DNA from: Macrostomum lignano | Lineage: Eukaryota | Assembly (NCBI GenBank): GCA_002269645.1 | Contig: NIVC01000360.1 | Span: 1 to 36,077, forward strand | Direction: 5' to 3' | Length of the DNA: 36,077 nt | Part shown: piece by piece, positions 1,684 through 33,600 of the stretch | Position numbering within the stretch: position 1 is the stretch's first letter | How the letters are laid out: each line of letters begins with the position of its first letter | Notes under the pieces: model-generated | Seen by the model: the letters and a program-made list of their open reading frames with translations, nothing else | What the model was told of the DNA's origin: nothing | The model's database searches: none | Position numbers and translations under genes: made by a program

Positions 1684-2829
1684 ATGTCCGACAGCAGCAG
1701 AATCAGCGCCTTCCCGCTGCCGCCAATGCAGTACGTGAACTGCTACACTGACGAGCGGGTGCACAGCGGCACCGCGCCGCCTCCGCCCCGGCCTCTGGAC
1801 TCCAGCTATGCCATGTTCGGCATGCCATGCACCAAAGAGGACGCCGTCATTCACTCGCTGGAGAGTCAGGGCATTCGCCGCCTGTACCCGGCGCTCTACG
1901 ATCACAAGCGGGAATTGAAGAAGCTGAATTTCTCCATCTTGGCCAACTATCTCGACCTGATGGACATTGTGGTTAAGTGTCCGGATTCTCAGGAGCGATT
2001 GCAGAAACTCGAGCATATGAAGACTCTGTTTATTAATGTGCACCATCTCATTAATGAGTATAGACCGCTACAGGTAATTTGTCTTTCTGTTTGAGTTTGC
2101 GAGTAGATTTTTGTTGGAATTTCACTGTTGTCTGATAGAAATCCCACCGAATATTCGACTGAAATCCCACCGAATATTCGACTGAAATCCCACCTGATAT
2201 TCGACTGAAATCCGACTGAATATTCGACTGAAATCCGACCGAATATTCTACTGAAATCCGACCGAATATTCAACTGAAATCCCACCGAATATTCGACTGA
2301 AATCCCACCGAATATTCGACTGAAATCCCACCAAATATTCGACTGAAATCCCACCAAATATTCGACTGAAATCCGACCGAATATTCGACTCGAACTCGCC
2401 TAGTATTCGACCAATATTTTATGGAACTGAACGTCAACTGAATGTTTCATTCGAATTTGGCTTAACATTGGCCTAAATCCGACCGAATATTGCGCTAAAT
2501 TTTGCACACTTCTGCCTATAATATAATAGATAATAAGATAATTAAAATCCGTATCGAACACTGGCCAACAGGCCAGGGACACCCTCATCGAGATGCTGTC
2601 CCTGCAGAGCAGCGTCACCCACCAGTCGGTGGACACGGCCTCCCGCTACCTGGCCCGAGCCGATGCCGTTGTTGGCCGAGCGGCGGCCGCCTCTGTCGGC
2701 GGAGACGAGGACGAACCAATGCGAGGGGCGGACGAGGCTGCCGGTGGCGAAATTTCCCAGGCGCTGCTAAACGATATCGATAAGCTCTCCGCTGAGCTGA
2801 GCGAGCTGACAGCGGCTGCGGCTGAGCTG
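1684..2829 (+). CDS. MED7: Mediator subunit 7: exon 1 1684-2073, exon 2 2572-2829. The 3' end is uncertain (read-through to stop 2919, short exon 2888-2926, or acidic exon 3454-3786).
   Basis: Med7-type motifs SAFPLPPMQY, PPPP.P..SYAMFG, SLESQGIRRLYP, DHKRELKKLNFSILANYLDL and FINVHHLINEYRP.Q|ARDTL. Phase-0 GT at 2074 and AG at 2570-2571. Confidence 0.92.
2138..2390. repeat. 23-bp minisatellite (~11 copies) in MED7 intron 1
   Basis: Unit GAAATCC(C/G)ACCGAATATTCGACT, containing the palindrome CGAATATTCG. Confidence 0.95.
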
Positions 2830-3044
2830 GTGAGGAGCCGCTTCTGCGATACGGGCGTCAATGTATTTATAATATTAGTATTCGCAGGAGGGCTGCGGCA
2901 ATTCTGCCCATTCCGCTGACTCTTGAGCACATAAAAGTACGCGGATACTGTACGGAGGCATATACACTCTGTGCCCTGGGGGGTTGGCCATCATCCTAGG
3001 TGTGAATCGCACCACAACCCGCTAAAGCGTCATTGCAAGCAACT

Positions 3045-3270
3045 CACTAGTGACTCAAAAGTCGAAAAATGTCCTCCAAGAGTCGTTGTACTAGCGCTTA
3101 ACTTTCTACAAACTCAGTGATTCTACAGCGACTCCAGCACGCCTCAGATACGACTCTACGGCCCCAGAGTCGTTTCAGAGTCGCAGACAATCAAAACTTC
3201 GCCTACAGTCACTTCTTTCCTATTTACCTGTGTTATCTGCAACCACTCTGAGACGCTTTCATCGGTCCTC
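3045..3270 (+). repeat. Dispersed GACTC/GAGTC-rich repeat, copy A
   Basis: TTCTACAGCGACTCCAGCACGCCTCAGATACGACTC...CCAGAGTCGTTTCAGAGTCGCAGAC is shared with 7278-7350. CTATTTACCTGT...CTGCAAC is shared with 14426-14455. Confidence 0.75.
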
Positions 3271-3453
3271 CAGACAAATCTTTCGTGCCAAAGGTGTCTT
3301 GGCAATTCCTCAGTGAGCATCTTAGCAATTATCATTAAGCACTCACCTCTCAAGACAGTTGACGAATCTTGTAAACAGTGCATTCGGTTCGGTTTTAATC
3401 TGTATAACAATTGATCCCAACCGGAATTCTACCCTCCCCCCCCCCCGGAGCAG

Positions 3454-3786
3454 GACGATGCAGAAAGTGCCGGCTTTGACTTGTTCGCGAGCCGCGGCGA
3501 CGACGGCAACGGCGACGAGGCGGCCGGAGATTCTGCGACCGACGATGTCGAATTGGAGGTGGACTCGGATGAGACTAGCGAAGACGACGACGAGGCGGAT
3601 GAGGCTGGCGAGGCTGTTGTCAATCTGCCAGCCGGTCATCAGGCAGCTGTCGGTTTTTCTTCAACTGGCAACGATGCAGCGTCTGGGAGCCTGGCACAGG
3701 CGCCGGCTGCTGAGGCGGCGGTGGGAGCGTCAGACGAGGCGCCAAGCGTGCTGGACGATCTGGACTCGCTGCTCGCCTTCAATTAA
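3454..3786 (+). CDS. Candidate acidic terminal exon (~110 aa, D/E/A-rich), probably MED7 exon 3
   Basis: GC-rich open frame ending DDLDSLLAFN*, with no ATG of its own. It follows a poly-C tract and a GAGCAG acceptor in phase 0, matching the phase-0 donor CTG|GTGAGG at 2829/2830. Confidence 0.5.
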   Translation, partial: DDAESAGFDLFASRGDDGNGDEAAGDSATDDVELEVDSDETSEDDDEADEAGEAVVNLPAGHQAAVGFSSTGNDAASGSLAQAPAAEAAVGASDEAPSVLDDLDSLLAFN

Positions 3787-4072
3787 TTAAGATTCTAGTA
3801 TATTAGACTAGCCATCCGCCCCCCCCCGGGGGGGGACGCGTTCTCCTATGCTGTAAATATTGCTGTCTCCTATGCTCTCAAGAAATTCCTAAGCATTTTT
3901 AAAGTTTGTTGCTTTCTACAATAATAAAGAATTGTGCAATAACGTTTGTTATTGTTATTGCCAGCTAGAATTTTTATTGCATTTTATTATTTATTATTAT
4001 TCAACCTACTTAGAAATATATTTATTAATTTAAAAACATCTACAGTCACAGTCACCATTGTGCATGCGGTAA

Positions 4073-6813
4073 ATGCTTAACAACGTTGCAAAAGGTCATG
4101 GTAACCATGGCAACCATCGGCCTTCCGAGCCATCCGCGCCGCCGCCGCTGCAGATGCCACCTCCTCCGTACTCGCCAGAGGAAGGCGCAACCAACGCCAG
4201 CAACTGCAGCTCGCGGCATCTGCGCGGCCTCGTCAGAGCCGCTCTCGAAGCTGACGAAGCCAACGGCGGAGTTGGCGGCAGCGAAGTTGTCGCCAGGTAC
4301 CTGGATGCCCGGCGCCAGCTGCTGGCTGCTCACAGTGACGCCGCGAAGATTCTTTGAAGCAGTTGGCTGCCAGCCTGCTCGAGAATGTCAACTCGAGACT
4401 GCTAAGCCTCGGAGTTCAGCTGCTGATGAGGGCAATGAAGCTGATGAGCCGACTGTTGCCGCGACTGAGGTGTGTTGCGACTGAAGTCATGGGCCACCAC
4501 CACCCACCCAGATCCTCAGTTGCTGGGCCAGCTTCCCAGAGTGTCAGTTGCTGTGCCAGCCTCCCAGATTCTCAGTTGCTGGGCCAGCCTCCGTGATCCT
4601 CAGTTGCTGGGCCAGCCTCCGAGATCCTCAGTTGCTGGGCCAGCCTCCCAGATCCTCAGTTGCTTGGCCAAAGCCACCTTCCCAGATCCGTAATTTCTGA
4701 GCTACAGCAGCTTCCCAGAGTGTCAGTTGCTGGGTCACCCTCCCAGATCCTCAGTTGCTGGGTCACCCTGCCAGATCCTCAGTTGCTGGGTCACCCTCCC
4801 AGATCCTCAGTTGCTGGGCCAGCCTCCCGGATCCTCAGTTGCTGGGCCAGCCTCCCGGATCCTCAGCTGCTGGGCCAGTCTCCCGGATCCTCAGTTGCTG
4901 GGCCAGCCTCCCAGATCCTCAGTTGCTGGGCCAGCCTCCCAGATCCTCAGTTGCTGGGCCAGCCTCCGAGATCCTCAGTTGCTGGGCCAGCCTCTGAGAT
5001 CCTCAGTTGCTGGGTCAAAGCCACCTTCCCAGATCTTAAGACTGCAGCCTCCCAAACCCGCAGCTGTTTCGGCTCCCAGACGGTGTCCGTCTATTCTTCG
5101 TAGCCTCGGACGGCCGAATCCGACACGGCGGCTCCAACAGCAGCCTCAGCCTGTTCGTCTTTGACGATGCCGCCACTGCCAGCGAAGCCGAGCAGAGCCA
5201 GTCGGCCCAGCCTCCAGCCTTCATCACTGTGGGCAGTCACTGGCGTTGCCCTTTGATCCCCGGCGTCACCCCGGTGCTCGCCTCGGCCAGCGGGGCGCTG
5301 ATCTTCCCGGATTTGGAGGCTCAGGACGAGGCCTCGTCTGTCGGGGTGATGCTGCCAGAGGGCCTGGACACCGAGAGCCGCTTCCTGCTGCTGGACCTGC
5401 TGGCTTGCCTGTCCAGATTGGGTGAGTTGCTTGTGTCCGAGCTTCAGGTGGGTGAGATCTCAGTTATAGTGAGCTTCAGGTGGGTGAGATCTCAGTTATA
5501 GTGAGCTTCAGGTGGGTGAGATCTCAGTTATAGTGAGCTTCAGGTGAGATCTCAGTTATAGTGAGCTTCAGGTGAGATCTCAGTTATAGTGAGCTTCAGG
5601 TGAGATCTCAGTTATAGTGAGCTTCAGGCGGGTGAGATCTCAGTTATAGCGAGCTTCAGGTGGGTGAGATCTCAGTTATAGTGAGCTTCAGGTGAGATCT
5701 CAGTTATAGTGAGCTTCAGGTGAGATCTCAGTTATAGTGAGCTTCAGGTGAGATCTCAATTATAGTGAGCTTCAGGTGGGTGAGATCTCAGTTACAGTGA
5801 GCTTCAGGTCGGTGAGATCTCAGCTGAAAATCCGGTATTAAAAGTCTAGTTACGCCCCTGATGGAATGTACGTGCAGTTGTGCTATCAGTGATTAATGTA
5901 AATGGCCTAATAAATTGAGTTTTTTTACTTAATCGCAGGAATCGAGCGCCAACCGGAAGCTCCGGAGAAGCCCCCTCCCTACGCTCCGACCCCGACTCCC
6001 GCCGTCACGCCCGCCGACGCCGACGCTGATCAGAAGCCGGCTAGACGGCACACTTCCGACCACCTCGTGACCGGAATCGGCTGGACGGCCGCCCGCATGT
6101 GCGAAGGCGCCGTAGCTGGCGGCAGACTGGCCGGCGACCTGCTGACCCGAGCTCGGCTGGCCGCTCAGAAACGAATGCGACCTGCTGCCGCTGGAAGCTC
6201 TGCTGGAAGCGCCGCCGGAAGTTCCGCCGGAAGTGCCGCCGGAAATTCCAACGAGAGTGCCAATTTGGACCACGTCACCACCGGAGTTCGCCTTCTCCGC
6301 CAAGGCAGCGCCGTTGGTGTCCGGGTCTCCAGGCGCCTGGTCTCCGGCCTGGTGTCCGGCGCCGGTTTTTTAGCCAGCCGAGTTGTTTATCCGCACGCGG
6401 TGGCGCCGGCGCTGAACGCCGTCGGCGTATCAACATCCGGTCGGGGCTCGCGCAGTCGGCTGGCCGGAGCGGCGCGGGTTGCAGGGGCGGCGTTGAGCGG
6501 CGCCTCGGACGTGTGGGAGAGCCTTGGCGCGGCCGGCAGCCAGCTGGCCACCTGCGCGGCGGACAACGGCCAGGCGCTGGCGACGCACCGCTGGGGCGAT
6601 CGAGCCGGCGCCGTCACTGGCGACGCCCTGCACGCCGGCGGCAATGTCGCCCGGATCGCTTGGGCCACTAACGCGTTGGGCGTTCGGGCGGCGCTGAAAG
6701 TGGTTGCCATGGAGACGGGCAAAGAGGCGGTAGGCCGGATGGCCGAGTCGGATGGCGCTAAGGCTGCATCGGCGGCGTCTGGCAGCGCGCCTTCGACCGG
6801 CGCGAAGCGTTGA
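4073..6813 (+). CDS. SPART: Spartin (SPG20): exons 4073-4469 (1-2 apparent 1-bp frameshifts near 4352 and 4410), 5064-5421 (alternative acceptor 5048), 5939-6813
   Basis: MIT-like helices (LVRAALEADE...LLENVNSRLLSL). PH-like segment ATE|LFRLPDGVRLFFVASDG and PPAFITVGSHWRCPLIPGVTPVL...GALIFPD. PPxY motifs and a C-terminal senescence domain (ETGKEAV). Splice phases are consistent. Confidence 0.85.
4497..5035. repeat. 28-bp minisatellite in SPART intron 1
   Basis: Unit CCTCCCAGATCCTCAGTTGCTGGGCCAG, with variants. Confidence 0.95.
5422..5825. repeat. 28/32-bp minisatellite in SPART intron 2
   Basis: Unit GTGAGATCTCAGTTATAGTGAGCTTCAG(GTGG), phased from the donor at 5422. Confidence 0.95.
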
Positions 6814-7027: not shown

Positions 7028-7397
7028 GTAGCGACTTTTGTGACTTTTTAACGACTCAAACGACTGCAATGCGACGCAGAGGCGACTGTTGAGTCACGAG
7101 CGCATCACGTGAGTTGCAGAGTCATAAAAAGTCGCGAAACAGTCGTCTAAGAGAGTCGCTGTGTTAGCGCTTAACTTACTACTGACTTAAGTAGGCTAAA
7201 CAGAGTTGTTACAAATGCGAAATGCGATTCAAATTCATAATAAAGTAATGCAGATGCGCTTCAGACGCAACTCAGAAATTCTACAGCGACTCCAGCACGC
7301 CTCAGATACGACTCAGATACGGCTCCAGAGTCGTTTCAGAGTCGCAGACTCGTTCCTGACATCTCGTCGTTTTAGAGTCGTCTAGAGTCGCTTTACT
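7028..7397 (+). repeat. Dispersed GACTC/GAGTC-rich repeat, copy B, interrupted by the BEL element and resuming at ~14428
   Basis: Homology to 3045-3270 continues on the far side of the retrotransposon. Confidence 0.7.
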
Positions 7398-7667
7398 TGT
7401 TTAGGAGTTGGCTTACATGTACGAGTGTACTTTTCATTCACCTACGCGTAACTTTCATAGCAGAGATTTTGATACGTACGTTTCAGCCCCAGCCCCCATT
7501 TATAATGTTCAGCAGCACCCACCCCATTTATTTAAAATTATTGCAATATATAGTTATCAGCCTCTCCAGAGAGAGTGCGCACGCTGGTTGTTTTGTTCGG
7601 TTGGCTAGTAGCCGAAAAATAGTCGCTTACTGCGAAGACTCAATTTATTGAATGAACCATCAAAACA
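7398..7667 (+). repeat. 5' LTR (270 bp)
   Basis: TGTTTAGG...CATCAAAACA; identical to 14153-14422 on base-by-base reading. Confidence 0.98.
7612..7654 (+). other. Spliced-leader-exon-like sequence inside the 5' LTR
   Basis: CCGAAAAATAGTCGCTTACTGCGAAGACTCAATTTATTGAATG, compared with the Macrostomum SL as recalled (CCGTAAAGACGGTCTCTTACTGCGAAGACTCAATTTATTGCATG). The last 29 nt match at 28 positions. No GT donor follows. Confidence 0.8.
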
Positions 7668-7669
7668 TC

Positions 7670-7687
7670 TGGTAGCAGAGCGTGGTT
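7670..7687 (+). promoter_or_regulatory. Primer-binding site complementary to the 3' end of initiator tRNA-Met
   Basis: TGGTAGCAGAGCGTGGTT begins 2 nt after the LTR. TGGTAGCAGAG is the reverse complement of the animal tRNAi-Met 3' end CTCTGCTACCA. Confidence 0.85.
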
Positions 7688-7729
7688 CTACTTGTGGTTC
7701 TACTTGTGGTTCTACTTCATTGGTAAAAG

Positions 7730-9160
7730 ATGTCTGATGAAGAAGCAGAGATGCAAGAACAAGTGCCGGAGGGAGACAGCCGTCTCATTTCGCTGAAGGC
7801 CAGAAAAGCGGTCGACAAGTGCGCGTTCACGAAGCAGCGGAATCGTCTACTGAAGGTATTGGGCTCGGACGGAGCTACTTTAGCGGACGTGGAACCGCTG
7901 GCCGGCACTCTGGATGACCACTACGAGCGAGTTAGTGCGGTGCTACAAGCGATTCTGCCCGAGGTCGTCGGGAATCTACCAGTGCAAGTCCAGACAGTAA
8001 AGGAGTTGGAAAAGCTGGAGACTGAGTACGGTGAGATTGTAAATTTGCTGAGAGAATTGCGCAAGAGGGAACGAGAGGTGCGACTAGAGTCGAGGGAGAT
8101 CGAGCAGAAAGAGATGCGACAGAAGGAGTTGGAGGCAGTCAGGCGGCAGCGGATAGAGATGGAGGAGGAGGAGCGCAGAATGCAGCAGGAGTTTGCAGAG
8201 AGGCAGCGCGAGTTAGATGTCAGATTGGATGCGCTAAGACTGGCAGAGACGTCAGCGAGTGCAAATGATCAATTGTACTCCTCTCAACTACGGGTAGAAG
8301 CGGCCGTCCAATCGCAAGCTGCGTACTCAGTACCAGTCGCCAACCCCATGGTTCAAGCCGACCCTTCAGTCAACCCCTTAATTGGGGGAGGGTCAGATCA
8401 ACTAAGGAGCGCTGAGCAAGGGGGTGAGAGAGTAAAGGCCGGAGAAAAATCAATACCACCCACCCCAACTGGCGGCAAGTGTGACCACGCTGATTCTAAC
8501 CAACCCCGCGGACAGCTAGGTATCCAAGCTATGTACGGTGGAGCTAATTCGCCAATTGGGGCTTCACCGGCCGCCGCAGCAGAATGTACAGCGAAAGCTT
8601 GGGCTGAGGAAAGAATCGGTCAGGATATGTGGAGGCAGTTGCAGAGAGTTGCGATACCGGTGTTTAGTGGAGACAAACGGGAGTTTGAAGGATGGCGGGC
8701 GGCTTTCTATGCCTGCGTGCATGCCTCGCCATCTTCAGAAGCCTATAAGTTGTTGCAATTGCGCCAGTCGCTGCGAGGAGAGGCATTAAAACTTGTTGCG
8801 AATCTTGGCTACTCGGAGTTCGCCTACAAAGCGGCTCTGGAAAGGCTTGAGCGGGAGTATGGTGGAGAGAGACGAAGACTGATGCTGGCACTGGAGGACT
8901 TGGATAGTTTCCAACCTATTCAGATAGAGAATGCAAGTCAATTAAAAAAGCTGGCCGACTTGCTGGATGTTACGGTAGTTAATCTACAGGCTGCAGGGCG
9001 AGAGAGTGAGCTAAGCAACAATGGACTTATGTACTTGAGAGTGCAAAAGAAGCTGCCAACCGAAACCCTAGCTCGTTTTCATCGGTGGATCGGAGAAGCT
9101 AGGAAAGAAGATTCGCTCAGAACGTTGCATCGATGGCTTCTGACGGAGGCAGATACATGA
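7730..9160 (+). CDS. BEL/Pao Gag (coiled coil plus DUF1759-like region), 476 aa as assembled
   Basis: IPVFSGDKREFEGWRAAF...KLLQLRQSLRGEALKLV...LERLEREYG motifs. Confidence 0.9.
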   Translation: MSDEEAEMQEQVPEGDSRLISLKARKAVDKCAFTKQRNRLLKVLGSDGATLADVEPLAGTLDDHYERVSAVLQAILPEVVGNLPVQVQTVKELEKLETEYGEIVNLLRELRKREREVRLESREIEQKEMRQKELEAVRRQRIEMEEEERRMQQEFAERQRELDVRLDALRLAETSASANDQLYSSQLRVEAAVQSQAAYSVPVANPMVQADPSVNPLIGGGSDQLRSAEQGGERVKAGEKSIPPTPTGGKCDHADSNQPRGQLGIQAMYGGANSPIGASPAAAAECTAKAWAEERIGQDMWRQLQRVAIPVFSGDKREFEGWRAAFYACVHASPSSEAYKLLQLRQSLRGEALKLVANLGYSEFAYKAALERLEREYGGERRRLMLALEDLDSFQPIQIENASQLKKLADLLDVTVVNLQAAGRESELSNNGLMYLRVQKKLPTETLARFHRWIGEARKEDSLRTLHRWLLTEADT

Positions 9161-12100
9161 CAGTAGCGTGTGAGGCGGTAAGAGGCGTGGCTTCTTCCGG
9201 TGAGACCGGACGGCACGACAGTGTAAAAGCCAAGAAAACTGTTTCCCGAGGGGCAGCCGCAGCACGCTCGTTTTTTGTGAAGACGAATGATTCGAATAGC
9301 CAAAACAAAGAACAGGCGGAAGGGCGAAAAGGTTGTGGTCTCTGCGGAGAACAGCACGGAGTTTGGAGCTGCCCAAGGTTTCAACGAATGGAACCTGGAG
9401 CCAGATGGGCGACGGTTCGTGACAAGCGCCTGTGCTTCTGCTGCTTGGGAGCAAACCATCTAGCCGGTGCGTGCAAGCGAGCGAGAGTGTGCGGTGTTGA
9501 TGGCTGCAAAGCAAACCATAATCGGCTGCTGCATCAACGAGGGCCGGCGGCGACAACGGCGAATCCGCATGAAGGGGGGTCGCCCAAAACGATCGAAAGA
9601 CCAAAGTCCTTCCAGGAGAAGAAGAGCACAGTTCAAGAGCCGCAAGAGGCATGCACTTTACTGGCCAGAACATCGCCGTCAATAGCGCTGAGGACTGTGC
9701 CCGTGATTTTATCCAACGGCGGTCGGGAAGTCCGAGTGAATGTCTTGCTGGACGACGCTAGCACCCGGTCGTACCTGAACTCTGACGTTGCAGCGGAACT
9801 CGGCTTGGAAGGCAACCTCGAACCGATGACGGTAAAGGTTCTGAACGGCCAGGTGAGCACCTTTCAGACGGTTCCGGTTGAGGTCGACATCCGCAGTCTG
9901 GACGGCGCCTTTCGTGCCACAGTTACGGCCCACACAACTGAGAAAGTGACCGGTGGGATGGAAGCCGTAGATTGGAGCCAGCTTGCAAAGCGTTGGGCTC
10001 ATCTGAGGGGCGTGCCGTTCGACAAAATTAAAGGGAAGCAGACTGTGGATATGCTCATTGGTGTGGACAATGCAGACTTGCACTTTGCCTGTCGCGAAGT
10101 AGGTGGGCAACCTGGAGAGCCGATTGCCAGACTGACGCCAATTGGGTGGACCTGCGTTGGACCAGTGAATCAAGTAGGAACTGCAGAAGAGCAGCAGCAG
10201 CAGACATTCTTTACGGTGACGGCGGAGAACGAGGCATCTGATCTTCTGCGGAAGATGTGGGAGATCGATGAAGTGCCAGATGGAGGACAGCAGGCCAGAA
10301 TGTCCGCTGAAGATCAAAAGATCGTAGAAGCGACACGAGCATCCTTGAAGATGGAGAACGGCAGGTTTCAAGTGGCGATTCCTTGGAAAAAGAATCCGGA
10401 AGAACTACCTATGAACAACGAAGCTGCCCTACAGCGTCTCGTCAGCACAGAAAAGCGCTTGCTGAAGAACCCGGAGCTAGCGAAGGCGTACCAGGCTGTG
10501 ATAGACAAGCATCTGGCAAAAGGCTATGTGCGGGAGGTCGGCATCAGCGAGCCAAGTCAGGCTGGCCAGTGGTTCTTGCCGCATTTCGCGATAGTGCGGG
10601 CCGATAAGGAGACGACCAAAGTTCGAATTGTGTTTGATGCAGCGGCTCGGAGCAATGGGGTCTGCCTAAATGACACCATTCATACGGGACCGAAGTTGCA
10701 GCAGGATTTGCTAAAGGTGCTCCTACGGTTCCGGAAGCATCCCGTGGCGCTAGCAGCCGACATCGAGGAGATGTATCTGAGAGTTCGAATTGCGCCGGAG
10801 GACAGAAGATTTTTCCGATTTCTGTGGCGAGACTTAGACTTGAAGCAAACGCCGAAGAGCTATGAGTTCTGCAGTGTGGTATTTGGCGTAAACTGCTCTC
10901 CGTTTCTGGCTCAGTTTGTGGCACAGGAGAATGCGCGACACTATCAGCAACAGCTGCCGCTGGCGGCCAACACCGTGCTGCATTCCACTTATATGGACGA
11001 CAGTCTAGACTCCGTAGAAACCGTTGGCCAAGCGGTGAAACTCTTCCAACAACTCGTAGAATTATGGAGCAAGGCAGGGATGCGAGCTTGCAAATGGATG
11101 TCGAATTCGTTAGAAGTGCTGCAACACGTTCCAGTCGAGGACCGCGCAGAACGCGCCGAGTTGCTATTGAAAGGTGAGGCCCGAACCGCTAAGGCGCTTG
11201 GAGTGAATTGGAATGCGAAAGAGGACGTCCTAGGAATTTCCATCAGCGAGTCGAATGCTAGCGGCAAGGTGATGACGAAGAGACTGCTTTTGCGCGGTGT
11301 GGCCGAGGTGTTTGACCCCTGTGGCTTCCTAGCTCCGGTAGTTATCACAGGAAAGATAATGCTGCAGTTGGCATGGCAACAAGGTGTTGGGTGGGATGAA
11401 GCGTTGGATCCTGAGTTGGCTGATCAAGCGTTTCAGTGGACCAGTGAGCTCTCCAAAGCTACGAGACTAGCCGTGCCTCGGTGTCTGCGTCCAGACAACG
11501 GATCCATCGAACTTCACTCGTTTGTAGACGCATCGCAAGAGGCCTACGGAGCCGTCGTATATCTGCGGAGCGAAACGATGAGTAAGACGACGGTCCGTTT
11601 CGTTGCTGCAAAGGCTAAGGTAGCACCATTGATGGCGGTGAGCATCCCTCGACTGGAGTTGATGGCGGCAGTCCTAGGACTTCGGCTCGCAAGGGCAGTG
11701 GCCGAGGCGTTGGAGATCGCGATTGAGTCTGTGGTGTTTTGGAGTGACAGTCACAATGTGCTTTGGTGGATTCGCAGGCAGAGTAGAGCGTTCAAGCCTT
11801 TCGTTGCGAACCGAGTCGCCTTCATCCAGCAGCAGGTGCAGCCAAATCAATGGCGGTACGTTCCAACAGGTCTGAATCCAGCGGATGTGGCATCCCGTGG
11901 CTGCAGTGTGCAAGAGCTGATGGACAACGAGCTGTGGTGGAACGGCCCTGGATTCTTGGCGAGGTGCTCAAACGATTGGCCAGAAATGCCGATTCCAGTT
12001 GCGCCAGAAACTACTGAGGCGAATACCCGTCGAAGAGAGCTAGCAAGCATCCAGAAGCGTTGTGCAGAGCCCGTATGTCTGGTCACCACCGATGAAGAAG

Positions 12101-13544
12101 ACAAGACAGGCTGGCGACTCAAACCAGAGCGATTCTCTAGTTTCCATCGACTGCAGCGCGTCTTCGCTTGGGTGTTGCGGTTCATTCGGAACTGTCAGAC
12201 GGAGAAGTATCAGCGGAGCGGCGGTGAGCTGTTGGTGGATGAGCTCGAGGAGGTCGAGGAGCGTTTGGTAAGGTTAGCTCAGGAGGAAGCGTTCAAGACG
12301 GATACAGTGAACGAGAAGAAGCTGCGGTGCTTGCAGCCGGTACGTGATGCAGCAGGAGTCCTACGAGTGGATGGCCGGTTGAAATTCAGGCCACAGGCGC
12401 CATTTGCAGCAAGACATCCATCTATTTTGCCGCGGAAGCATTGGATCACCAAGCTGATCATCAAACAATATCACGAGCAGCAGAGCCATGGTGGGACTAA
12501 CCAAACTCTGGCGGCGCTGTCAGCCAAGTATTGGGTTATCTGTGCTCGGGAAGCTATTCGCGAGTGGGAGGTTGAATGCGCTGTGTGCAAGAGAGAGAAA
12601 GCTCGTCCCATCGTACAACAGATGGCGCCACTGCCTGATGCCCGTGTCGCAGGATCCTTAAAAGCCTTCACGAACGTAGCCGTCGACATGGGAGGGCCGT
12701 TCGTCACTATTCAAGGCCGATTTAAGAAGAGGCAGAAACGCTATTTGGCGCTGTTCACATGCCTCGAGACGCGAGCGGTACACCTCGAGATGACCTACAG
12801 CCTTGACGCGGACTCTTTCTTGAACGCCTTCTACCGAATGGTGAACAGGCGTGGCTTACCCAAGGCTATGTATTCTGACAACGGTGGCAACTTTGTAAAA
12901 GGTGCAGATGAACTGCGACTTCTGGAGGAGCTGGACAGGACAAGGATCAGTCGCGAGACATCCAAGCAGCGAGTCAAGTGGAACTTCCAGCCGCCAGCCG
13001 CCCCGCACTTTGGTGGAGCCCACGAGGTGATGATTCGGGCTGCGAAGCGAGCGCTACACGCGATTCTGGGCAGCGCAGATGTCACCGACGAGGAGCTTCA
13101 GTCAGCGATCACTGGAGCGGAGGCGCTTATCAACTCGCGCCCCATCACCTATCAATCGGCGAATCCGAGAGACGAAGAGCCACTAACGCCAAACCATTTC
13201 CTGCACGGTCAAGCTGGTGGACAATTCGCGCCGGATGTGCCCGACGACGTCGCGGCTGACCCGAGGCGGCGGTGGCGGCGCGTCCAAGAACTCGTGAGGC
13301 ACGTCTGGCGACGCTGGATGCGCGAATGGCTGCCAGGGTTGCAGCCGAGAGCCAAGTGGGCGGGACCGCAGCGGCCAGGTGATGTCGTTCTCGTCATCAA
13401 AGCAGACTCACCGCGGGACACTGGCCGTTGGGACGAGTAGTCGAAGTCTACCCAGGTTCAGACAATCGAGTCCGGGTGGCCAAGGTCCAGGTCGGTGGGA
13501 CGGTATTCGTGCGGCCTGTGAGCAAACTGTGCTATCTCGAGTGA
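9133..13544 (+). CDS. BEL/Pao Gag Zn knuckles plus Pol (PR, RT, RNase H, IN). The integrase C-terminus continues in a shifted frame from ~13415 to stop 13544.
   Basis: [37 protein letters not shown]; [10 protein letters not shown]; [18 protein letters not shown]; DIEEMY; YMDD; [17 protein letters not shown]; H..HGG..C..C; [22 protein letters not shown]. The shifted tail reads [23 protein letters not shown]...[10 protein letters not shown]. Confidence 0.95.
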
Positions 13545-14140
13545 GAGGAGTTGATCATTTGCTTAAGAACTGTTTGTTTTCTTTTCCGGACTTTTCCGAG
13601 TTTACGCTGAGTTTTCAAATTGTTTGTACTGTATCGTGTGCGTTCAGTAGGCTTTCTGCCAGTTTTGGGCTTTTCAAGCCGTTGCCTTTTTGATTATTGG
13701 TTGTGTCTGTTTTTGTTCATGGTTTTTTTTGGGATCAGATTTTTTTGGAGCGCAGTTGGCGCATTTGTTTTTCCTTTGAGTTTGAGCTGTTTGAAGTTTC
13801 TGTTAAGTTACGGTGATGGGTTTTTTCTGTCAACCATTTTCGACTTTATTAAAATTGCGAGTTTAAGCTGAGTTGCAAATTTTTATATTTTTTGATGTTT
13901 AGTGGTAACTTATTTCAGTTTGCGGTCTTGCGCATTTTCATTGTTTTCATTTGCGAGTCTTGGTGGCGGGTGCCGAAACATCTTTTCAGTTTGGCTTTTG
14001 AGCTCTTTTGAGCCCTCACGCTTCTCGTGCTGTTCCCAGGCGTTGTATGTTTTTTTTTGCTATGGTCATAGTTTGTCCGTTCGGTTACTAGGTACTCAAG
14101 TTCAGTGTTTCCGGTCTTTGTTGCTGACATTGCTCTGTCA

Positions 14141-14152
14141 GGAAGGGGGGAA
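14141..14152 (+). promoter_or_regulatory. Polypurine tract
   Basis: GGAAGGGGGGAA immediately before the 3' LTR. Confidence 0.9.
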
Positions 14153-14422
14153 TGTTTAGGAGTTGGCTTACATGTACGAGTGTACTTTTCATTCACCTAC
14201 GCGTAACTTTCATAGCAGAGATTTTGATACGTACGTTTCAGCCCCAGCCCCCATTTATAATGTTCAGCAGCACCCACCCCATTTATTTAAAATTATTGCA
14301 ATATATAGTTATCAGCCTCTCCAGAGAGAGTGCGCACGCTGGTTGTTTTGTTCGGTTGGCTAGTAGCCGAAAAATAGTCGCTTACTGCGAAGACTCAATT
14401 TATTGAATGAACCATCAAAACA
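14153..14422 (+). repeat. 3' LTR (270 bp)
   Basis: Identical to the 5' LTR and followed by the TSD TTACT. Confidence 0.98.
14367..14409 (+). other. Spliced-leader-exon-like sequence inside the 3' LTR
   Basis: Same sequence as 7612-7654. Confidence 0.8.
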
Positions 14423-14975
14423 TTACTATTTTACCTGTATTTTACCTGCAACGACTCTTGGGGCGTTTCTTGGCCTAGGTACCGTTTTCAGATAAATTGT
14501 ATAATGAGATAGATTATGCACTCAGTCAACCTCCCAAATGAATTCTTAGAAACAAGAAAAAGTGGCCCCGTCCTTCTGTTTGAGTCTTCCTTGCTCACTT
14601 ATACTCTGCTCACTTATAATATTCGGATTGCAAGGCGGAACTCACGCACTTCCCTTTTAGATTCGTTGTGACCAGTTGCATGAAACTGACTAATTATTAT
14701 TTTCTTGTCAGTAAAGTAGTTTATTGCAATATATTCAGCCCAATCTATTGTATTGTATTATCACATTTAGAGCGAATGACGCTTTACACAATGTGAAATG
14801 TGTTTATTTTCTATTTTACTTCTGCGTTGAGTTTTCTTTGCAAATACACTGGATTTATTGTGGATATTTTTTGATAAAGTATATTTACTAATGTTTAGTT
14901 TTTATTAGTAAATTGAGTAAAGGATCACTTAAGTTTTGTGAACTGAAAAATATTAAGAAGGTGACAGTCTACTCA

Positions 14976-20853: not shown

Positions 20854-23800
20854 GGCAGACAGACAGGCAGACAGACCAAATCGTTTATTTCCACCCCTCC
20901 CACGCCAGCATTGGGAGGACTCGCTGAGGGCCGGTCTCGAGCGCAGCCTTACGCCGCAGGCGCTTGACGCCCTGCTAGAGTTTTCGGCTCTGTGCAACAA
21001 CGGCGAGGACCCCAGCTCGCACTCGGCCGCCGCAGAGTTGCAGTCCCGTCTGGACATCTGGCTGCGCAAGTGGGCGGACACCGAGCTGCCCAGCCAGTGC
21101 GTGCAGACAGCCTGGGAGGAGCTGTACGCCCAGCTGGACGGCTTGCCCTGCCAGCCTGACCACGACCGGGTGCTGGAGCCGCTGCAGGTGAAGGATTCTA
21201 GCCTGGACAAAAACAAAAGACTTTAGTAGTCTTTGTCCTTGGCATAGGTAGCCCAGAAGCTTTAGTAGTCTTTGTCCTTGGCATAGGTAGCCCAGAAGCT
21301 TTAGTAGTCTTTGTCCTTGGCATAGGTAGCCCAGAAGCTTTAGTAGTCTTTGTCCTTGGCATAGGTAGCCCAGAAGCTTTAGTAGTCTTTGTCCTTGGCA
21401 TAGATAGCCCAGAAGCTTTAGTAGTCTATGTCCTTGGCATAGATAGCCCAGAAGATTTAGTAGTCTTTGTCCTTTGCATAGATAGCCCAGAAGCTTTATT
21501 AGTCTTTGTCCTTGGCATAGATAGCCCAGAAGCTTTAGTAGTCTTTGTCCTTGGCATAGATAGCCCAGAAGCTTTAGTAGTCTTTGTCCTTGGCATAGAT
21601 AGCCCAGAAGCTTTAGTAGTCTTTGTCCTTGGCATAGAGAGCCCAGAAGCTTTAGTAGTCTTTGTCCTTGGCATAGAGAGCCCAGAAGCTTTAGTAGTCT
21701 TTGTACTTGGAATATGTAGCAAACTTTAGTAGTCTTTTTACTTAATTAGCACTTTAGCAGTTTCAGTACCTGCCGTCTTTAAGCTAGCTATTTTATTCAA
21801 AGGAAAAACAAAGAGCCAGATAGCCAGACCGCACGATGCACCCCACTCTCACTGTCTCTGTGCAGGCCGCCGTCAGGGCCGAGGCGCGCAAAGCCCACCG
21901 CTGGGATCCCAAGGCCGAGGGCGCGCTCCGGGTCTTGCAGATGGCCGCGCTAGACGAGCGAGCGGTGCCGACCAGGGCGGACTGGGACGGCGCCGTGGCA
22001 CTGCTCCGCCGGGTTCTGCAGCGCCGCCTCGCCGAAGTGGAATCCGAGCTGGCCAAGTCGTGCGGCCCCGGCGCCTGGGAGCGCTGGACCCGGTGGCGCG
22101 GCCGGACCGAAGCTCAGCAGCGGCTGGTGCAGCTGTCCAACGAGTTGCGCAACTGCCTGCTGACCGGGGCGGCGGTTGGCGGGCGCCGCAATCCTGCCGA
22201 GCTGTCTGACGAGGACCTGATCGCAGTTCGACGGAATCTGCTGGCTCAGGTGAGAGTTTGAAGATGAACTGAGCAGATTCCCTTTCGAGTGGCTCAGCTG
22301 AGAGTTTGAAGATGAACTGAGCAGATTCCCTTTCGAGTGGCTCAGCTGAGAGTTTGAAGATGAACTGAGCAGATTCCCTTTCGAGTGGCTCAGCTGAGAG
22401 TTTGAAGATGAACTGAGCAGATTCCCTTTCGAGTGGCTCAGCTGAGAGTTTGAAGATGAACTGAGCAGATTCCCTTTCGAGTGGCTCAGCTGAGAGTTTG
22501 AAGATGAACTGAGCAGATTCCCTTTCGAGTGGCTCAGCTGAGAGTTTGAAGATGAACTGAGCAGATTCCCTTTCGAGTGGCTCAGCTGAGAGTTTGAAGA
22601 TGAACTGAGCAGATTCCCTTTCGAGTGGCTCAGCTGAGAGTTTGAAGATGAACTGAGCAGATTCCCTTTCGAGTGGCTCAGCTGAGAGTTTGAAGATGAA
22701 CTGAGCAGATTCCCTTTCGAGTGGCTCAGCTGAGAGTTTGAAGATGAACTGAGCAGATTCCCTTTCGAGTGGCTCAGCTGAGAGTTTGAAGATGAACTGA
22801 GCAGATTCCCTTTCGAGTGGCTCAGCTGAGAGTTTGAAGATGAACTGAGCAGATTCCCTTTCGAGTGGCTCAGCTGAGAGTTTGAAGATGAACTGAGCAG
22901 ATTCCCTTTCGAGTGGCTCAGCTGAGAGTTTGAAGATGAACTGAGCAGATTCCCTTTCGAGTGGCTCAGCTGAGAGTTTGAAGATGAACTGAGCAGATTC
23001 CCTTTCGAGTGGCTCAGCTGAGAGTTTGAAGATGAACTGAGCAGATTCCCTTTCGAGTGGCTCAGCTGAGAGTTTGAAGATGAACTGAGCAGATTCCCTT
23101 TCGAGTGGCTCAGCTGAGAGTTTGAAGATGAACTGAGCAGATTCCCTTTCGAGTGGCTCAGCTGAGAGTTTGAAGATGAACTGAGCAGATTCCCTTTCGA
23201 GTGGCTCAGCTGAGAGTTTGAAGATGAACTGAGCAGATTCCCTTTCGAGTGGCTCAGCTGAGAGTTTGAAGATGAACTGAGCAGATTCCCTTTCGAGTGG
23301 CTCAGCTGAGAGTTTGAAGATGAACTGAGCAGATTCCCTTTCGAGTGGCTCAGCTGAGAGTTTGAAGATGAACTGAGCAGATTCCCTTTCGAGTGGCTCA
23401 GCTGAGAGTTTGAAGATGAACTGAGCAGATTCCCTTTCGAGTGGCTCAGCTGAGAGTTTGAAGATCAGGATGAGGTGATCAGTGGATCAGGTGAGGTCCC
23501 AATTTGAAGCCCCTTGAAAAACTCGAATTCATTTTAACAAAAAAAGATTTAAATCCCCCTCTGCTTGTCGATCACGCAGGGTGTTGAAGGCGTCACAGAC
23601 GAGGAGCTGCGGTCGGCCTGGCCGCTGGTGTACCGGCAGTTCGCCCTGCGCTGCGGGCTGGACTCGTGCGCCCAGTGCGCCAAGCTCTACTATCACTACC
23701 AGCAGCGGATCGGCACCGCTGCTGACTGCATTGCTGTGCCATTTTTCTATCGAGTTGGCCGCATGCTCGACGCCACCAGCTCGGCGCTGCGACAGCAGAT

Positions 23801-30365: not shown

Positions 30366-30689
30366 TGCCATAGCTTCCCATAGAAAAAAACTGCTCTTAT
30401 GGCTACAACTGGAAAAATATGTAGTACTTGTAGTTTATAAGCTTTCCTATAGACTTCTATTAAGTTTTAGTATTTTATTTTGAATTTAAATCAATTATAT
30501 GGTAAAACAATTGTTTAGTAATATTGTAGCAAAAAACTTGAAGTTTATTGTACAAAGAAGAATTTTTGTCTTGCTGTAATTATGACTAAAACTTATGGTA
30601 AAATGCCTACAGTAGAAAACACCTGCTTTAGCCTAGAAGGTCTTCCATTTTATGGCTAAGGTCAAAATATACTGAACACCTGAATTGCA

Positions 30690-33600
30690 ATGGCCGCTTG
30701 AATCTCTTCTGGCTGATCACAGTGAACGTCGGCACTCCATCGGCGCTCGGGCTTCTTCAACTGGCAGTCGCGGCAGGAAGCGCTGCTGCCGGCACTCCAG
30801 CTCGGACGAGGCAGAGCCGGCCGCGGCCAACCCGGCACACGCCGCCGCTGCAGCGTCAGCAACCGCTTCAACAGCAGCCAACTTCAAAGGGACTCAAAGT
30901 AAGCGGACTCGACTTCAGCAGCACCGCGACGATGTAAATATCGGCGCCACTGAGACAGCGTGGACTGCTGACCGCGACGATGTCGGGACTGCTGGCCAGG
31001 CGATCCCCAACGCGGCCAACAGCAGCAGCGGCAGTTTGAACACTGTCGATGATTTCGTCATGGCACCAGCGATTGCCGGAGGAGCGTCAGCGTCGGCCGC
31101 CGCTTTGTCGTCTGTCGATGCCGGCGTTACTGGCGGCGTCACCACCCGGTCGCGGATTCGCGAATCGGCCGCGCTGGCTCTGGTTGAGGAGCTCCGACTG
31201 CGGCCGAAATCATTTGAGCACCTGCCACCTGAGGTGTACTGCCGCATCCTGCAGTACCTGTCCATTGTCGAGCTGATGCGGGTCACCTCGGTCAATCGGC
31301 AATTCCATGCCGCCGTCACGAAGCACCTGCGATTGGCCAAGCGAATCAACTTCTGTAGCGGCTTGCCGTTCACCTTCTTGTCCGAATCTCTTGACGACCT
31401 GACGCTGGCCTCTGTGCTGTCCCTGTGCCCGGAGGTCACTCACATTCTTGGCTTCTATCCTCGTAGGATTTTGCACCGAGCTCCTCAGCAGCCACAGCAG
31501 CAGGGAGCGACGGCTGCTGCCAATTCGCAAGCCGCCTCTTCTGCTTCTTCCTCCGTAGGTGCTAGCCGAACTAACCGATTCCTCACCTACGGCGGCATCC
31601 TGCAAGCGCTGAAGCAGTGCAAGAAGCTCAAATCAATCGAAATCATGGACGTCGACTTGATGTCGCGTCTTATCGCTTCCTTTCCTCGCGTGAAATTTCA
31701 CGGCATGTTTCGCAATCGGCCGGACATTTGGGACTGCGAGCGGGCTTACGAAGGCCCGAGTCCGTTGCCTAGCAGCGCCACGAAACTGCTGCTTAGCCCG
31801 CAGATTAACAGCCTCACTAAGGTTAGTCTGGTTTCTTATTTACAGACCATCCTCTGGTGTGACTCTACTGGGTTTATCGAATCAATGATCGGTCCTGCCG
31901 CCACCTCCACCCTCCCAGATCTTTAGTCGCTGGGACACCGCCACCCTCCCAGATTCTCAGTTGCTGTGCCAGCCTCCCAGATTCTCAGTTGCTGGGCCAG
32001 CCTCCGAGATCCTCAGTTGCTGTGCCAGCCTCCGAGATCCTCAGTTGCTGTGCCAGCCTCCGAGATCCTCAGTTGCTGGGCCAGCCTCCCAGATTCTCAG
32101 TTGCTGGGCCAGCCTCCCAGATCCTCAGTTGCTGGGTCAGCCTCCGAGATCGTCAGTTGCTGGGCCTCACTGGGCCTCGAATCTCACTTAGCTAGCAGAG
32201 AAGATACTACTTGGGTTTTTGTATAAAATACCCAGCTGTAGTGCCTACACCGCAACAGGCATTCAATGTTGCAAAATATTTTGTTTTTATTTTCGCAGGT
32301 GGATTTGCAGACAGTCTGTCTGAACACCCTGCCCAAGATGGACTGCGTCCGCTACCTGTACCTGAAGTGGGTCCGCTTTGCCAGCAACGATCCGTTCGTG
32401 AACTTCAGCGCGCCCAAGCTGCAGACCTTCGTGATGAACAACTGCGCCGGGCCCAGCAACGCATTTCGCTATCTGCGCGTGTTCACCGCCCTGGCCAAAG
32501 CGCCGCAGCTGGCCCGGCTGGAGCTCACTGGCCTGCGCTTCATCACCGGCCTCATTGAGCACATTGTTGACGAGATTGGCGTCGACTCTCGGGCGTTCCG
32601 CGCTCTACAGAAGCTGTCGCTGTCCAGCAACAGGTCTGCCAGCGAAATTGACGCCGGCTGCCTGCTGCTGGCCTCCTCCGCCGGGCTCAGCTGCGCCTCT
32701 CTGCAGAGCAGCCTGTGCAAAGACTCGCTGTTCGTGTCGCTCACCTATGCCCAGGCTCAGTTTCCTAAGCTGGACACGCTGACCTTGGGTTATAAGGATC
32801 CCTGTCCTGACCTGGATAGGTAACTACTGCTCCAGTGCTATTGTCTTTCAGGCACTCACTCAGTCACTTCAGTTGCTCACTCCAGTCAGACACCCCTCCA
32901 GTTGCTCACTCAATCACTCACTGCAGTTACACAATCAGTCACTCACTCCAGTTATTTACTCCAGTCACTCACTCCAGTTATTCACTCCAGTCACTCACTC
33001 CAGTCACTCACTCAGTCACTCACTCCACTCACTCACTCCAGTCACTCACTTCAGTTATTCACTCCAGTCACTCACTCCAGTTATTCACTCCAGTCACTCA
33101 CTCAGTCACTCACTCCACTCACTCACTCCAGTCACTCACTTCAGTTATTCACTCCAGTCACTCACTCCAGTTATTCACTCCAGTCACTCGCTCCAGTTAT
33201 TCACTCCAGTCACTCACTCAGTCACTCGCTCCAGTTATTCACTCCAGTCACTCACTCAGTCACTCACTCAGTCACTCACTCCAGTTATTCACTCCAGTCA
33301 CTCACTCCAGTTATTCACTCCAGTCACTCACTCAGTCACCCACTCCAGTTATTCACTCCAGTCACTCACTCAGTCACCCACTCCAGTTATTCACTCCAGT
33401 CACTCACTCCAGTCACTCACTCCAGTTATTCACTCCAGTCACTCACTCAGTCACTCGCTCCAGTTATTCACTCCAGTCACTCACTCAGTCACTCACTCAG
33501 TCACTCACTCCAGTCACTCACTCCAGTTATTCACTCCAGTCACTCACTCCAGTTATTCACTCCAGTCACTCACTCAGTCACTCGCTCCAGTTATTCACTC

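What the first reader, a model, noticed from the sequence alone, without database searches (positions are those of the whole stretch)
7612..7667. Both LTRs of the BEL/Pao retrotransposon contain the host spliced-leader exon: SL capture or mimicry by an LTR element
Seen: each LTR ends ...CCGAAAAATAGTCGCTTACTGCGAAGACTCAATTTATTGAATG-AACCATCAAAACA (7612-7667 and 14367-14422), followed in the 5' copy by the PBS. Known, from memory and to be verified: the Macrostomum lignano SL exon is about CCGTAAAGACGGTCTCTTACTGCGAAGACTCAATTTATTGCATG, and flatworm SLs characteristically end in AUG. The last 29 nt match at 28 positions, and the 5' CCG.AAA...GTC is also retained, so the whole leader is represented. 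The ATG is not followed by GT and there is no SL intron or Sm site, so this is not an SL RNA gene. It is part of the element, not its target, unlike SL-gene-targeting non-LTR elements such as NeSL, SLACS and CRE. Inference: the SL forms the R/U5 region, so element RNA would begin with an SL encoded in cis. It could have been captured when strong-stop DNA was copied from a trans-spliced genomic RNA, or taken from an SL RNA gene together with its snRNA-type promoter. It might give SL-dependent translation, stability or TMG capping. I know of no description of this in LTR elements.
Basis: partly seen in the sequence, partly recalled or inferred. Interest (0 to 1): 0.93.

Follow-up and report, generated by a model that had tools for sequence, protein, structure and literature searches.

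The report
Host spliced leader inside retrotransposon LTRs
Both long terminal repeats of an intact flatworm BEL/Pao retrotransposon carry a slightly diverged copy of the host's spliced-leader exon, most likely because a trans-spliced element RNA was once reverse transcribed; the case is unusually clean, but the phenomenon has already been noted in passing for parasitic flatworms.

Summary
Window 7611-7654 and 14366-14409 match the published Macrostomum spliced leader (SL) exon at 39 of 45 positions. The last 29 nt match at 28 positions, where chance predicts no such hit. The copies lie 13 nt from the 3' end of two identical 270-bp LTRs of an intact BEL/Pao element (7398-14422).

Similarity starts at the first SL nucleotide and stops at the splice-donor boundary. 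The LTR shows no similarity to the promoter or intron of a genuine SL RNA gene (L005). The 13 nt after the SL are the element's own U5 terminus.

The best explanation is RNA-mediated capture. An ancestral element transcript was SL trans-spliced in U5 and then reverse transcribed, and the SL has since been inherited as LTR sequence.

Not supported or untestable here:
- co-capture of an snRNA-type promoter (tested, not supported);
- transcription starting at 7612 (the only TATA-like motif predicts a start about 30 nt upstream);
- TMG capping or any functional mimicry.

The novelty claim is overstated. A 2025 study of parasitic flatworms reported 597 partial-SL loci associated with LTR and LINE elements and proposed the same origin. 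No other copy of this family could be retrieved, so conservation and function remain open.

The parts
7393..7397 (+). 5' target-site duplication TTACT
   Evidence: The same 5 nt follow the 3' LTR at 14423-14427.
7398..7667 (+). 5' LTR, 270 bp, TG...CA, with terminal inverted repeat TGTTT/AAACA
   Evidence: 100% identical to 14153-14422. Termini compared.
7547..7552 (+). TATATA, the only TATA-like hexamer in the LTR; it overlaps AATATA at 7545
   Evidence: Motif scan. Its role as a TATA box, and a transcription start near 7577-7582, are inferred only.
7586..7610 (+). T/G-rich tract ending in CTAGTA(G), directly upstream of the SL copy; possible remnant of the ancestral trans-splice acceptor
   Evidence: Read directly from the sequence. 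It does not fit the commonest M. lignano acceptor motif [T/C]TNCAG, so this is a weak inference.
7611..7654 (+). SL exon copy in the 5' LTR (39/45 identical to the Macrostomum SL)
   Evidence: Published SL. Genuine SL RNA gene L005 615-659 for comparison.
7655..7667 (+). AACCATCAAAACA, the element's own U5 terminus, joined directly to the SL ATG
   Evidence: It contains the LTR terminal inverted repeat AAACA. It has no similarity to the SL intron.
7652..7675 (+). 7-codon uORF opened by the SL ATG (MNHQNIW*), ending inside the PBS
   Evidence: Read directly from the sequence.
7670..7688 (+). Primer-binding site TGGTAGCAGAGCGTGGTTC, after a 2-nt TC spacer
   Evidence: Sequence. Its complement ends in ...CTCTGCTACCA, which resembles the 3' end of initiator tRNA-Met (own knowledge, not tested here).
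7730..9160 (+). gag ORF, 476 aa (DUF1759)
   Evidence: 66% identical over 147 aa to M. lignano UniRef protein A0A1I8G1W5.
9133..13440 (+). pol ORF, 1435 aa (RVT_1, Peptidase_A17/Pao, Integrase_H2C2, DUF5641), in the -1 frame relative to gag
14140..14152 (+). Polypurine tract AGGAAGGGGGGAA
   Evidence: Lies immediately upstream of the 3' LTR.
14153..14422 (+). 3' LTR
14366..14409 (+). SL exon copy in the 3' LTR
14423..14427 (+). 3' target-site duplication TTACT

Best explanation
The motif is a relict host spliced leader that entered the LTR through RNA.

Proposed steps (all inferred unless marked):
1. An ancestor of this BEL/Pao family had a trans-splice acceptor in U5, 13 nt before the LTR end and upstream of the PBS.
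2. The host SL was spliced onto one of its transcripts, giving SL-AACCATCAAAACA-PBS-gag-pol.
3. That RNA was packaged, and reverse transcriptase copied it from the PBS to the first SL nucleotide.
4. The nascent minus strand then continued by an illegitimate or microhomology-guided template switch. The target was either the co-packaged unspliced RNA just upstream of the acceptor or the 3' end of the RNA.
5. The completed LTR became U3-R-(old U5)-SL-13 nt.

Both LTRs are built from one template, so every daughter copy carries the SL in both LTRs and passes it on.

Today the SL copy is most likely an internal part of the 5' leader (U5, or R/U5). It lies about 30 nt downstream of the start predicted from the TATA-like motif and 76 nt upstream of the gag ATG, and its ATG opens a 7-codon uORF. 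It is compatible with transposition (inferred from the intact element). No function is required to explain its presence.

Shown: identity, position, exon-exact boundaries, lack of promoter or intron homology, and an intact, young element. Inferred: the ancestral acceptor, the template switch, the transcription start and the lack of function.
For: 1. The SL match is far beyond chance, both for the core and for the 5' part.
2. Homology begins at the first SL nucleotide and ends exactly at the exon/donor boundary. The LTR regions upstream and downstream of the copy show no similarity to the promoter or intron of a genuine SL RNA gene, L005. That is the footprint of a mature trans-spliced 5' end.
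3. The 13 nt joined to the SL carry the LTR's own terminal inverted repeat. The element's own RNA was therefore the splice acceptor.
4. Trans-spliced mRNAs with the same SL show the same layout of SL-ATG followed directly by the transcript body, often with a short uORF (L001-L004, L006).
5. The LTRs are 100% identical, but the SL copy differs from the genus-wide conserved SL at 6 positions. Unless a variant SL was the source, the capture predates this insertion and has been propagated.
6. The element is intact: TSD, PBS, PPT, and open gag and pol.
7. Precedents exist. The spliced 2.4-kb Cer1 mRNA is SL1 trans-spliced in C. elegans (PMC3315495). Partial leaders are associated with LTR and LINE elements in parasitic flatworms, with the same proposed origin (PMC12582326). 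Dinoflagellates carry relict SLs (PMC3229502).
Against: - Only one copy of the family could be examined. No SL-less relative was available to reveal the ancestral acceptor.
- The tract upstream of the SL copy ends in TAG and does not fit the commonest M. lignano acceptor motif [T/C]TNCAG.
- A minus strand that ends in SL complement has no R homology, so a rare illegitimate transfer must be assumed.
- The differences from the canonical SL cluster in its 5' third (5/16 against 1/29; Fisher p = 0.017). Uniform neutral decay does not predict this. It could reflect selection on the 3' part, a variant source SL, or errors at capture.
- The transcription start and poly(A) site are unknown, and the LTR has no AATAAA or ATTAAA.
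Confidence: 0.62

Rival explanations
1. Functional SL mimicry. Selection maintains the SL copy, transcription starts at or next to its first base, and element RNAs carry a cis-encoded leader. This would give SL-dependent translation, stability or capping, or let the SL serve as the R repeat for strand transfer.
For: - The 3' 29 nt are almost unchanged (28/29) while the 5' 16 nt have drifted (Fisher p = 0.017). Constraint on the 3' part would explain this.
- The element is intact and young, so the SL-bearing LTR is at least not harmful.
- In Ascaris the SL sequence itself acts as an intragenic promoter element of the SL RNA gene (own knowledge: Hannon et al. 1990, not retrieved here). An SL exon could therefore in principle set its own start site.
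Against: - There is no transcript evidence.
- The only TATA-like motif lies 64 nt upstream of 7611, which predicts a start about 30 nt before the SL.
- The LTR has no similarity to an SL gene promoter.
- A transcript made from an mRNA-type promoter would be expected to carry an m7G cap rather than the TMG cap that SL RNAs carry (PMC8629364; the expectation itself is general knowledge).
- The 5' third, next to the cap, is the diverged part.
- Predicted folding of the copy is weaker than that of the true SL (-5.3 against -8.8 kcal/mol).
- Conservation across copies or families could not be tested.
Confidence: 0.15
2. Reverse transcriptase switched templates from the element RNA onto a different SL-bearing molecule, either free SL RNA or a co-packaged trans-spliced host mRNA. 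The element's own transcript was not trans-spliced.
For: Reverse transcriptases are known to switch onto small nuclear RNAs, as in L1-U6 chimeric retrocopies (own knowledge). The SL copy reaches the 5'-most SL nucleotide, as expected when a template is copied to its end.
Against: The junction lies exactly at the exon 3' end, with no intron bases. A switch onto free SL RNA, or into the interior of a host mRNA, would have had to land precisely there. Trans-splicing produces that junction by itself. The bases after the junction are the element's own U5 terminus.
Confidence: 0.06
3. DNA-level capture of an SL RNA gene, or part of one, together with its snRNA-type promoter. This would be analogous to plant Cassandra elements, which carry 5S rDNA in their LTRs.
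For: Both LTRs contain a small-RNA-derived sequence, as in Cassandra (own knowledge).
Against: - There is no donor GTAAG, no Sm site and no stem-loops II/III.
- There is no similarity upstream or downstream of the exon to the genuine gene.
- Rfam finds nothing in the window.
- The comparison gene comes from a metagenomic Macrostomum-like organism. A fast-evolving promoter could escape detection.
Confidence: 0.03
4. Chance resemblance or an assembly artefact.
For: None beyond the fact that only one element was seen.
Against: No shuffle gave a match. Two identical copies sit in a structurally complete element with a TSD.
Confidence: 0.01

Closest known systems
Partial SL sequences associated with LTR and LINE elements in parasitic flatworm genomes (Mol Biol Evol 2025, PMC12582326)
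   Same: These are DNA-encoded leader sequences with no other SL RNA features, next to retroelements. [quoted passage not shown]
   Different: That report is a one-paragraph by-product of filtering: 597 loci within 500 bp of repeats, in cestodes and trematodes, with no anatomy. Here the leader is full length. It is mapped to U5 of both LTRs of an intact autonomous BEL/Pao element in a free-living macrostomid, and the exon-exact boundaries were tested.
Relict spliced leaders of dinoflagellate retrogenes ('mRNA recycling', Slamovits and Keeling 2008; PMC3229502)
   Same: The SL is encoded in DNA at the 5' end of a retro-copied transcript. It diverges from the canonical SL with age.
   Different: The dinoflagellate relicts sit on host retrogenes. 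They are truncated at an internal AG and often occur in tandem. Here there is a single untruncated copy inside a self-replicating LTR, and no second relict was found.
SL1 trans-splicing of the spliced 2.4-kb Cer1 mRNA in C. elegans (PMC3315495)
   Same: It shows that LTR-retrotransposon transcripts can be substrates for SL trans-splicing.
   Different: In Cer1 the SL is added to RNA only, and the 8-kb genomic RNA is not trans-spliced at that site. No SL is encoded in the element's DNA.
Cassandra TRIM elements with 5S rDNA in both LTRs (own knowledge: Kalendar et al. 2008)
   Same: A host small-RNA sequence is carried in both LTRs and propagated by retrotransposition.
   Different: Cassandra carries the 5S internal promoter and a foldable 5S unit. 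Here only the SL exon is present, without promoter, intron or Sm site.
SL-gene-targeting non-LTR elements (NeSL-1, SLACS, CZAR, CRE; own knowledge)
   Same: A retroelement is associated with SL sequence.
   Different: Those elements insert into SL RNA genes. Here the SL lies inside the element, within the TSD, and the flanking DNA is not an SL gene.

Membership tests
BEL/Pao LTR retrotransposon | Direct LTRs with TG...CA termini, flanked by a short target-site duplication | tested here: met
   The 270-bp LTRs are 100% identical and the TSD is TTACT.
BEL/Pao LTR retrotransposon | pol with the Pao-type Peptidase_A17 region, RT and integrase; gag with DUF1759 | tested here: met
   Pfam hits: PF05380 at 3e-48, plus PF00078, PF17921, PF18701 and PF03564.
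BEL/Pao LTR retrotransposon | PBS next to the 5' LTR and PPT next to the 3' LTR | tested here: met
   TGGTAGCAGAGCGTGGTTC at 7670-7688 and AGGAAGGGGGGAA at 14140-14152. The tRNA identity was not verified.
SL RNA gene | SL exon sequence | tested here: met
   39/45 identical to the published SL.
SL RNA gene | GT splice donor immediately after the exon | tested here: not met
   ATG is followed by AACC. The genuine gene has ATG|GTAAG (PMC8629364).
SL RNA gene | Sm-like site flanked by stem-loops in the intron part | tested here: not met
   No similarity to the L005 intron. The fold of the SL copy plus leader is no better than shuffles (z = -0.39), whereas the genuine SL RNA gives z = -3.46.
SL RNA gene | Shared upstream promoter region | tested here: not met
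   LTR U3 against L005 121-614 scores no better than shuffles. The comparison gene comes from a metagenomic relative.
Retro-captured (relict) SL | DNA-encoded SL homology confined to the exon, from its first base to the donor boundary | tested here: met
Retro-captured (relict) SL | SL joined to the transcript body at a site that was a 3' splice acceptor in the unspliced ancestor | not testable with these tools
   No SL-less relative could be retrieved. A T/G-rich tract ending in TAG lies just upstream of the SL copy, but this is only suggestive.
Retro-captured (relict) SL | Tandem truncated relicts from repeated cycles (the dinoflagellate pattern) | tested here: not met
   No second SL-like segment in the LTR, the leader or the rest of the window.
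SL-gene-targeting non-LTR retrotransposons (NeSL/SLACS/CRE) | Element inserted at a specific site within an SL RNA gene | tested here: not met
   The SL lies inside both LTRs and within the TSD. The element is an LTR type, and the flanks are not an SL gene.
Cassandra-like LTR carrying a functional small-RNA gene | Complete small-RNA unit with its own promoter inside the LTR | tested here: not met
   Only the exon is present. No promoter or intron homology was found.

The most novel reading that the evidence does not exclude
Selection maintains the SL copy as a working part of the element. It would define the 5' end or the R repeat of the genomic RNA, possibly by acting as an intragenic initiator like the Ascaris SL. 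Element RNAs would then look like trans-spliced host mRNAs, gaining translation or stability or escaping silencing. Alternatively, host-trans-spliced element RNAs could still complete first-strand transfer by pairing their SL with the SL copy in the 3' LTR.
Probability: 0.12. Interest if true: 0.85.

Novelty: new member of a known kind. Interest (0 to 1): 0.5.

Why it matters
- It is direct genomic evidence that RNA of an autonomous LTR retrotransposon in a macrostomid flatworm was SL trans-spliced, and that such an RNA, which lacks its 5' R, could still be reverse transcribed and integrated. That requires a non-canonical strand transfer.
- It yields an LTR family that permanently encodes the host leader. 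This is a natural construct for asking what the SL sequence does when encoded in cis without a TMG cap.
- There is a practical consequence. Genome-encoded SL copies in repeats can be mistaken for SL RNA genes. Their transcripts can also be mistaken for trans-spliced reads in pipelines that define gene 5' ends from SL-containing reads. The GAATG/GCATG difference and the diverged 5' third would help tell the two apart.

Tried and rejected
- Other copies of the family. An exact look-up of gag found nothing. The best pol homologue is 63% identical, on a 4.8-kb JGI contig with no SL match. The best gag homologue is an M. lignano UniRef protein with no DNA available.
- More distant relatives. P0002 and P0009 on ENA contigs L008 and L009 carry no Macrostomum SL, and their host SL is unknown. 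Conservation could therefore not be assessed.
- Viral-contig scans for the SL core and for the PBS found nothing.
- Rfam found no family in the window.
- Species identification. A homologue search with the Senescence-domain ORF gave no hits. The source is inferred to be Macrostomum or a close relative only from the SL and the gag hit.
- Supplementary consensus sequences of M. lignano LTR families (PMC12801592) are not held.
- SL-gene promoter capture was tested and rejected.
- A second or tandem relict SL was searched for and not found.
- No canonical poly(A) signal could be located in the LTR, so R could not be delimited.
- A literature search for the Ascaris intragenic SL promoter retrieved nothing usable. 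That point rests on my own knowledge.

Full report
**1. What is there**

Window 7398-14422 is a complete BEL/Pao LTR retrotransposon.
- It has two 270-bp LTRs (7398-7667 and 14153-14422) that are 100% identical.
- The termini are TG...CA, with a TGTTT/AAACA inverted repeat and a 5-bp target-site duplication, TTACT.
- A polypurine tract, AGGAAGGGGGGAA, abuts the 3' LTR.
- A PBS-like TGGTAGCAGAGCGTGGTTC lies two bases after the 5' LTR.
- The gag ORF is 476 aa and contains DUF1759. The pol ORF is 1435 aa in the -1 frame and contains RVT_1, Peptidase_A17, Integrase_H2C2 and DUF5641.

Identical LTRs and open reading frames point to a recent insertion of a family that is, or was very recently, active.

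**2. The observation**

- PMC5173321 prints CCGTAAAGACGGTCTCTTACTGCGAAGACTCAATTTATTGCATG.
- PMC8629364 uses the 35-nt form. It describes the 109-bp SL RNA gene with a GTAAG donor and an Sm-like site.
- The PMC10468722 supplement gives the same leader for M. cliftonense (45 nt, with an extra 5' G) and M. hystrix.

The leader is therefore conserved across the genus.

In the window, the 29-nt core occurs only at 7626-7654 and 14381-14409. It has one mismatch (C to A, giving GAATG). None of 100 shuffles produced a match.

The 15 nt upstream align to the SL 5' part with 11 of 16 identities and one gap. Only about 0.1% of random 15-mers score as well.

The copy thus spans the whole leader, 7611-7654 and 14366-14409, at 39/45 identity.

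**3. A genuine SL RNA gene for comparison**

One metagenome scan for the SL core returned six contigs.
- Five of them (L001-L004, L006) begin with ...GCATG followed by different mRNA bodies. These are trans-spliced transcripts.
- The sixth, L005, holds a true SL RNA gene. Its exon is at 615-659, followed by GTAAG, a U-rich Sm-like site and hairpins. It folds well beyond shuffles (z = -3.46).

Against this gene the LTR shares nothing outside the exon.
- LTR 7398-7610 against 494 bp of gene upstream sequence (L005 121-614) scores at or below the shuffle mean.
- The LTR and leader downstream of the ATG score the same way against the SL intron.

Homology therefore begins at the first SL base and ends at the donor boundary.

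**4. Origin**

Exon-exact boundaries are what a mature trans-spliced 5' end looks like. They argue against DNA-level capture of an SL gene or its promoter.

The 13 nt joined to the SL ATG (AACCATCAAAACA) end in the LTR's own terminal inverted repeat. The molecule that received the SL was therefore the element's own transcript, spliced at an acceptor in U5 upstream of the PBS.

Such an RNA keeps the PBS and the coding region but has lost R. Minus-strand synthesis from the PBS would copy the 13 nt and then the whole SL. To finish, the nascent DNA must switch templates without R homology.

The T/G-rich tract ending in CTAGTA(G) directly 5' of the SL copy may be the old acceptor. If so, the SL sits exactly where splicing occurred. 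One possible mechanism is re-priming on the co-packaged unspliced RNA just upstream of the acceptor, with the shared G as one base of microhomology. This step is inference. The tract does not match the commonest M. lignano trans-acceptor motif [T/C]TNCAG.

Once it is in U5, the normal replication cycle copies the SL into both LTRs of every daughter. Its presence in both LTRs therefore needs no special explanation.

**5. Age and constraint**

The two LTRs do not differ at any of 270 positions. The SL copy differs from the genus-wide SL at 6 of 45 positions. Those changes therefore arose before this insertion. Three sources are possible:
- an SL-bearing lineage that has transposed repeatedly;
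- errors at the time of capture;
- a variant source SL.

The changes cluster in the 5' third (5/16 against 1/29; Fisher p = 0.017). This leaves room for constraint on the 3' part. With only one copy it cannot be separated from the other explanations.

**6. How it sits in the transcript**

- The LTR has a single TATA-like hexamer (TATATA, 7547-7552), which overlaps the AATATA hexamer at 7545, and no AATAAA or ATTAAA.
- A TATA-driven start would fall near 7577-7582, about 30 nt before the SL. The SL would then be internal to the leader rather than at the RNA's first base.
- The SL ATG opens a 7-codon uORF that ends in the PBS. The gag ATG lies 76 nt after the SL. Authentic trans-spliced mRNAs L001, L004 and L006 also show short uORFs from the SL ATG.
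- The copy's predicted fold is weaker than that of the true SL.
- None of this tests function.

**7. Comparison with what is known**

- PMC12582326 (2025) discarded 597 candidate SL loci in cestodes and trematodes because they lay within 500 bp of mobile elements, mainly LTR and LINE. These loci showed only partial leader sequence. [quoted passage not shown] That is the same phenomenon and the same proposed origin, stated briefly and without anatomy.
- Dinoflagellate relict SLs on retrogenes are the classic analogue.
- The spliced 2.4-kb Cer1 mRNA shows SL1 trans-splicing of an LTR-element RNA.
- Cassandra (5S in LTRs) and NeSL/SLACS/CRE (insertion into SL genes) resemble this case only superficially. 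Their defining features were tested here and not met.
- No paper in the searchable library describes an SL within an LTR in Macrostomum.

**8. Limits**

- No second copy or sister family could be retrieved.
- The source species is inferred only from the SL and from a 66%-identical gag segment in an M. lignano protein.
- The transcription start, poly(A) site, cap type and any function are untested.

**9. Verdict**

The capture interpretation is supported. The promoter-capture, start-site and mimicry parts are unsupported or open. The claim of complete novelty is not upheld. This is a well-resolved new example of a phenomenon already noted in passing in other flatworms. It is of moderate interest, with a small chance of a more interesting functional role.

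Noticed in passing
window 7682-7717: Three perfect tandem copies of the 12-nt unit GTGGTTCTACTT lie in the leader. The first copy overlaps the 3' end of the PBS (GTGGTTC), so the part of the PBS that would pair with the tRNA T-arm is triplicated.
   Followed up: no
window 9103-9160: The pol frame is open from 9103 and overlaps gag by 58 nt in the -1 frame. The overlap contains no canonical X XXY YYZ slippery heptamer, so how pol is expressed is unclear.
   Followed up: partly
window 7386-7397: The 5' flank next to the insertion reads AGTCGCTTTACT. This resembles the SL copy's AGTCGCTTACT (7620-7630). The flank is built from repeated AGAGTCG-like units, so this is probably chance.
   Followed up: no
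window 6067-6813 and 30685-31926: Two host-like ORFs lie on the + strand. One has a Senescence (spartin-like) domain and ends 585 bp upstream of the element. The other has an F-box domain. The Senescence ORF found no homologue in the word-indexed protein search.
   Followed up: partly
window 2138-5823 and 14976-35640: The window is packed with unrelated minisatellite arrays with periods of 4 to 60 bp. Examples are 48 bp x 25.5 copies at 99% identity (22242-23465) and 31 bp x 32 copies (34640-35640). The same 28-bp unit occurs at 4500-5014 and again at 31940-32166.
   Followed up: no
L005 587-720 (JGI contig Ga0302322_100095745): A complete SL RNA gene with the exact Macrostomum leader sits in an environmental metagenome contig. 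It is preceded by a partial duplicate of its first bases (GCCGTAAAC...GCCGTAAAGACGG). Five contigs from sample Ga0316592 start with the same SL, so macrostomid-like transcripts are present in these public samples.
   Followed up: partly
PMC8629364 (literature): The 'SL RNA' first published for M. lignano was later found to map to the 5' end of a protein-coding gene model, Mlig013257.g1, with a genome-encoded SL. That locus might be another retro-captured SL.
   Followed up: no
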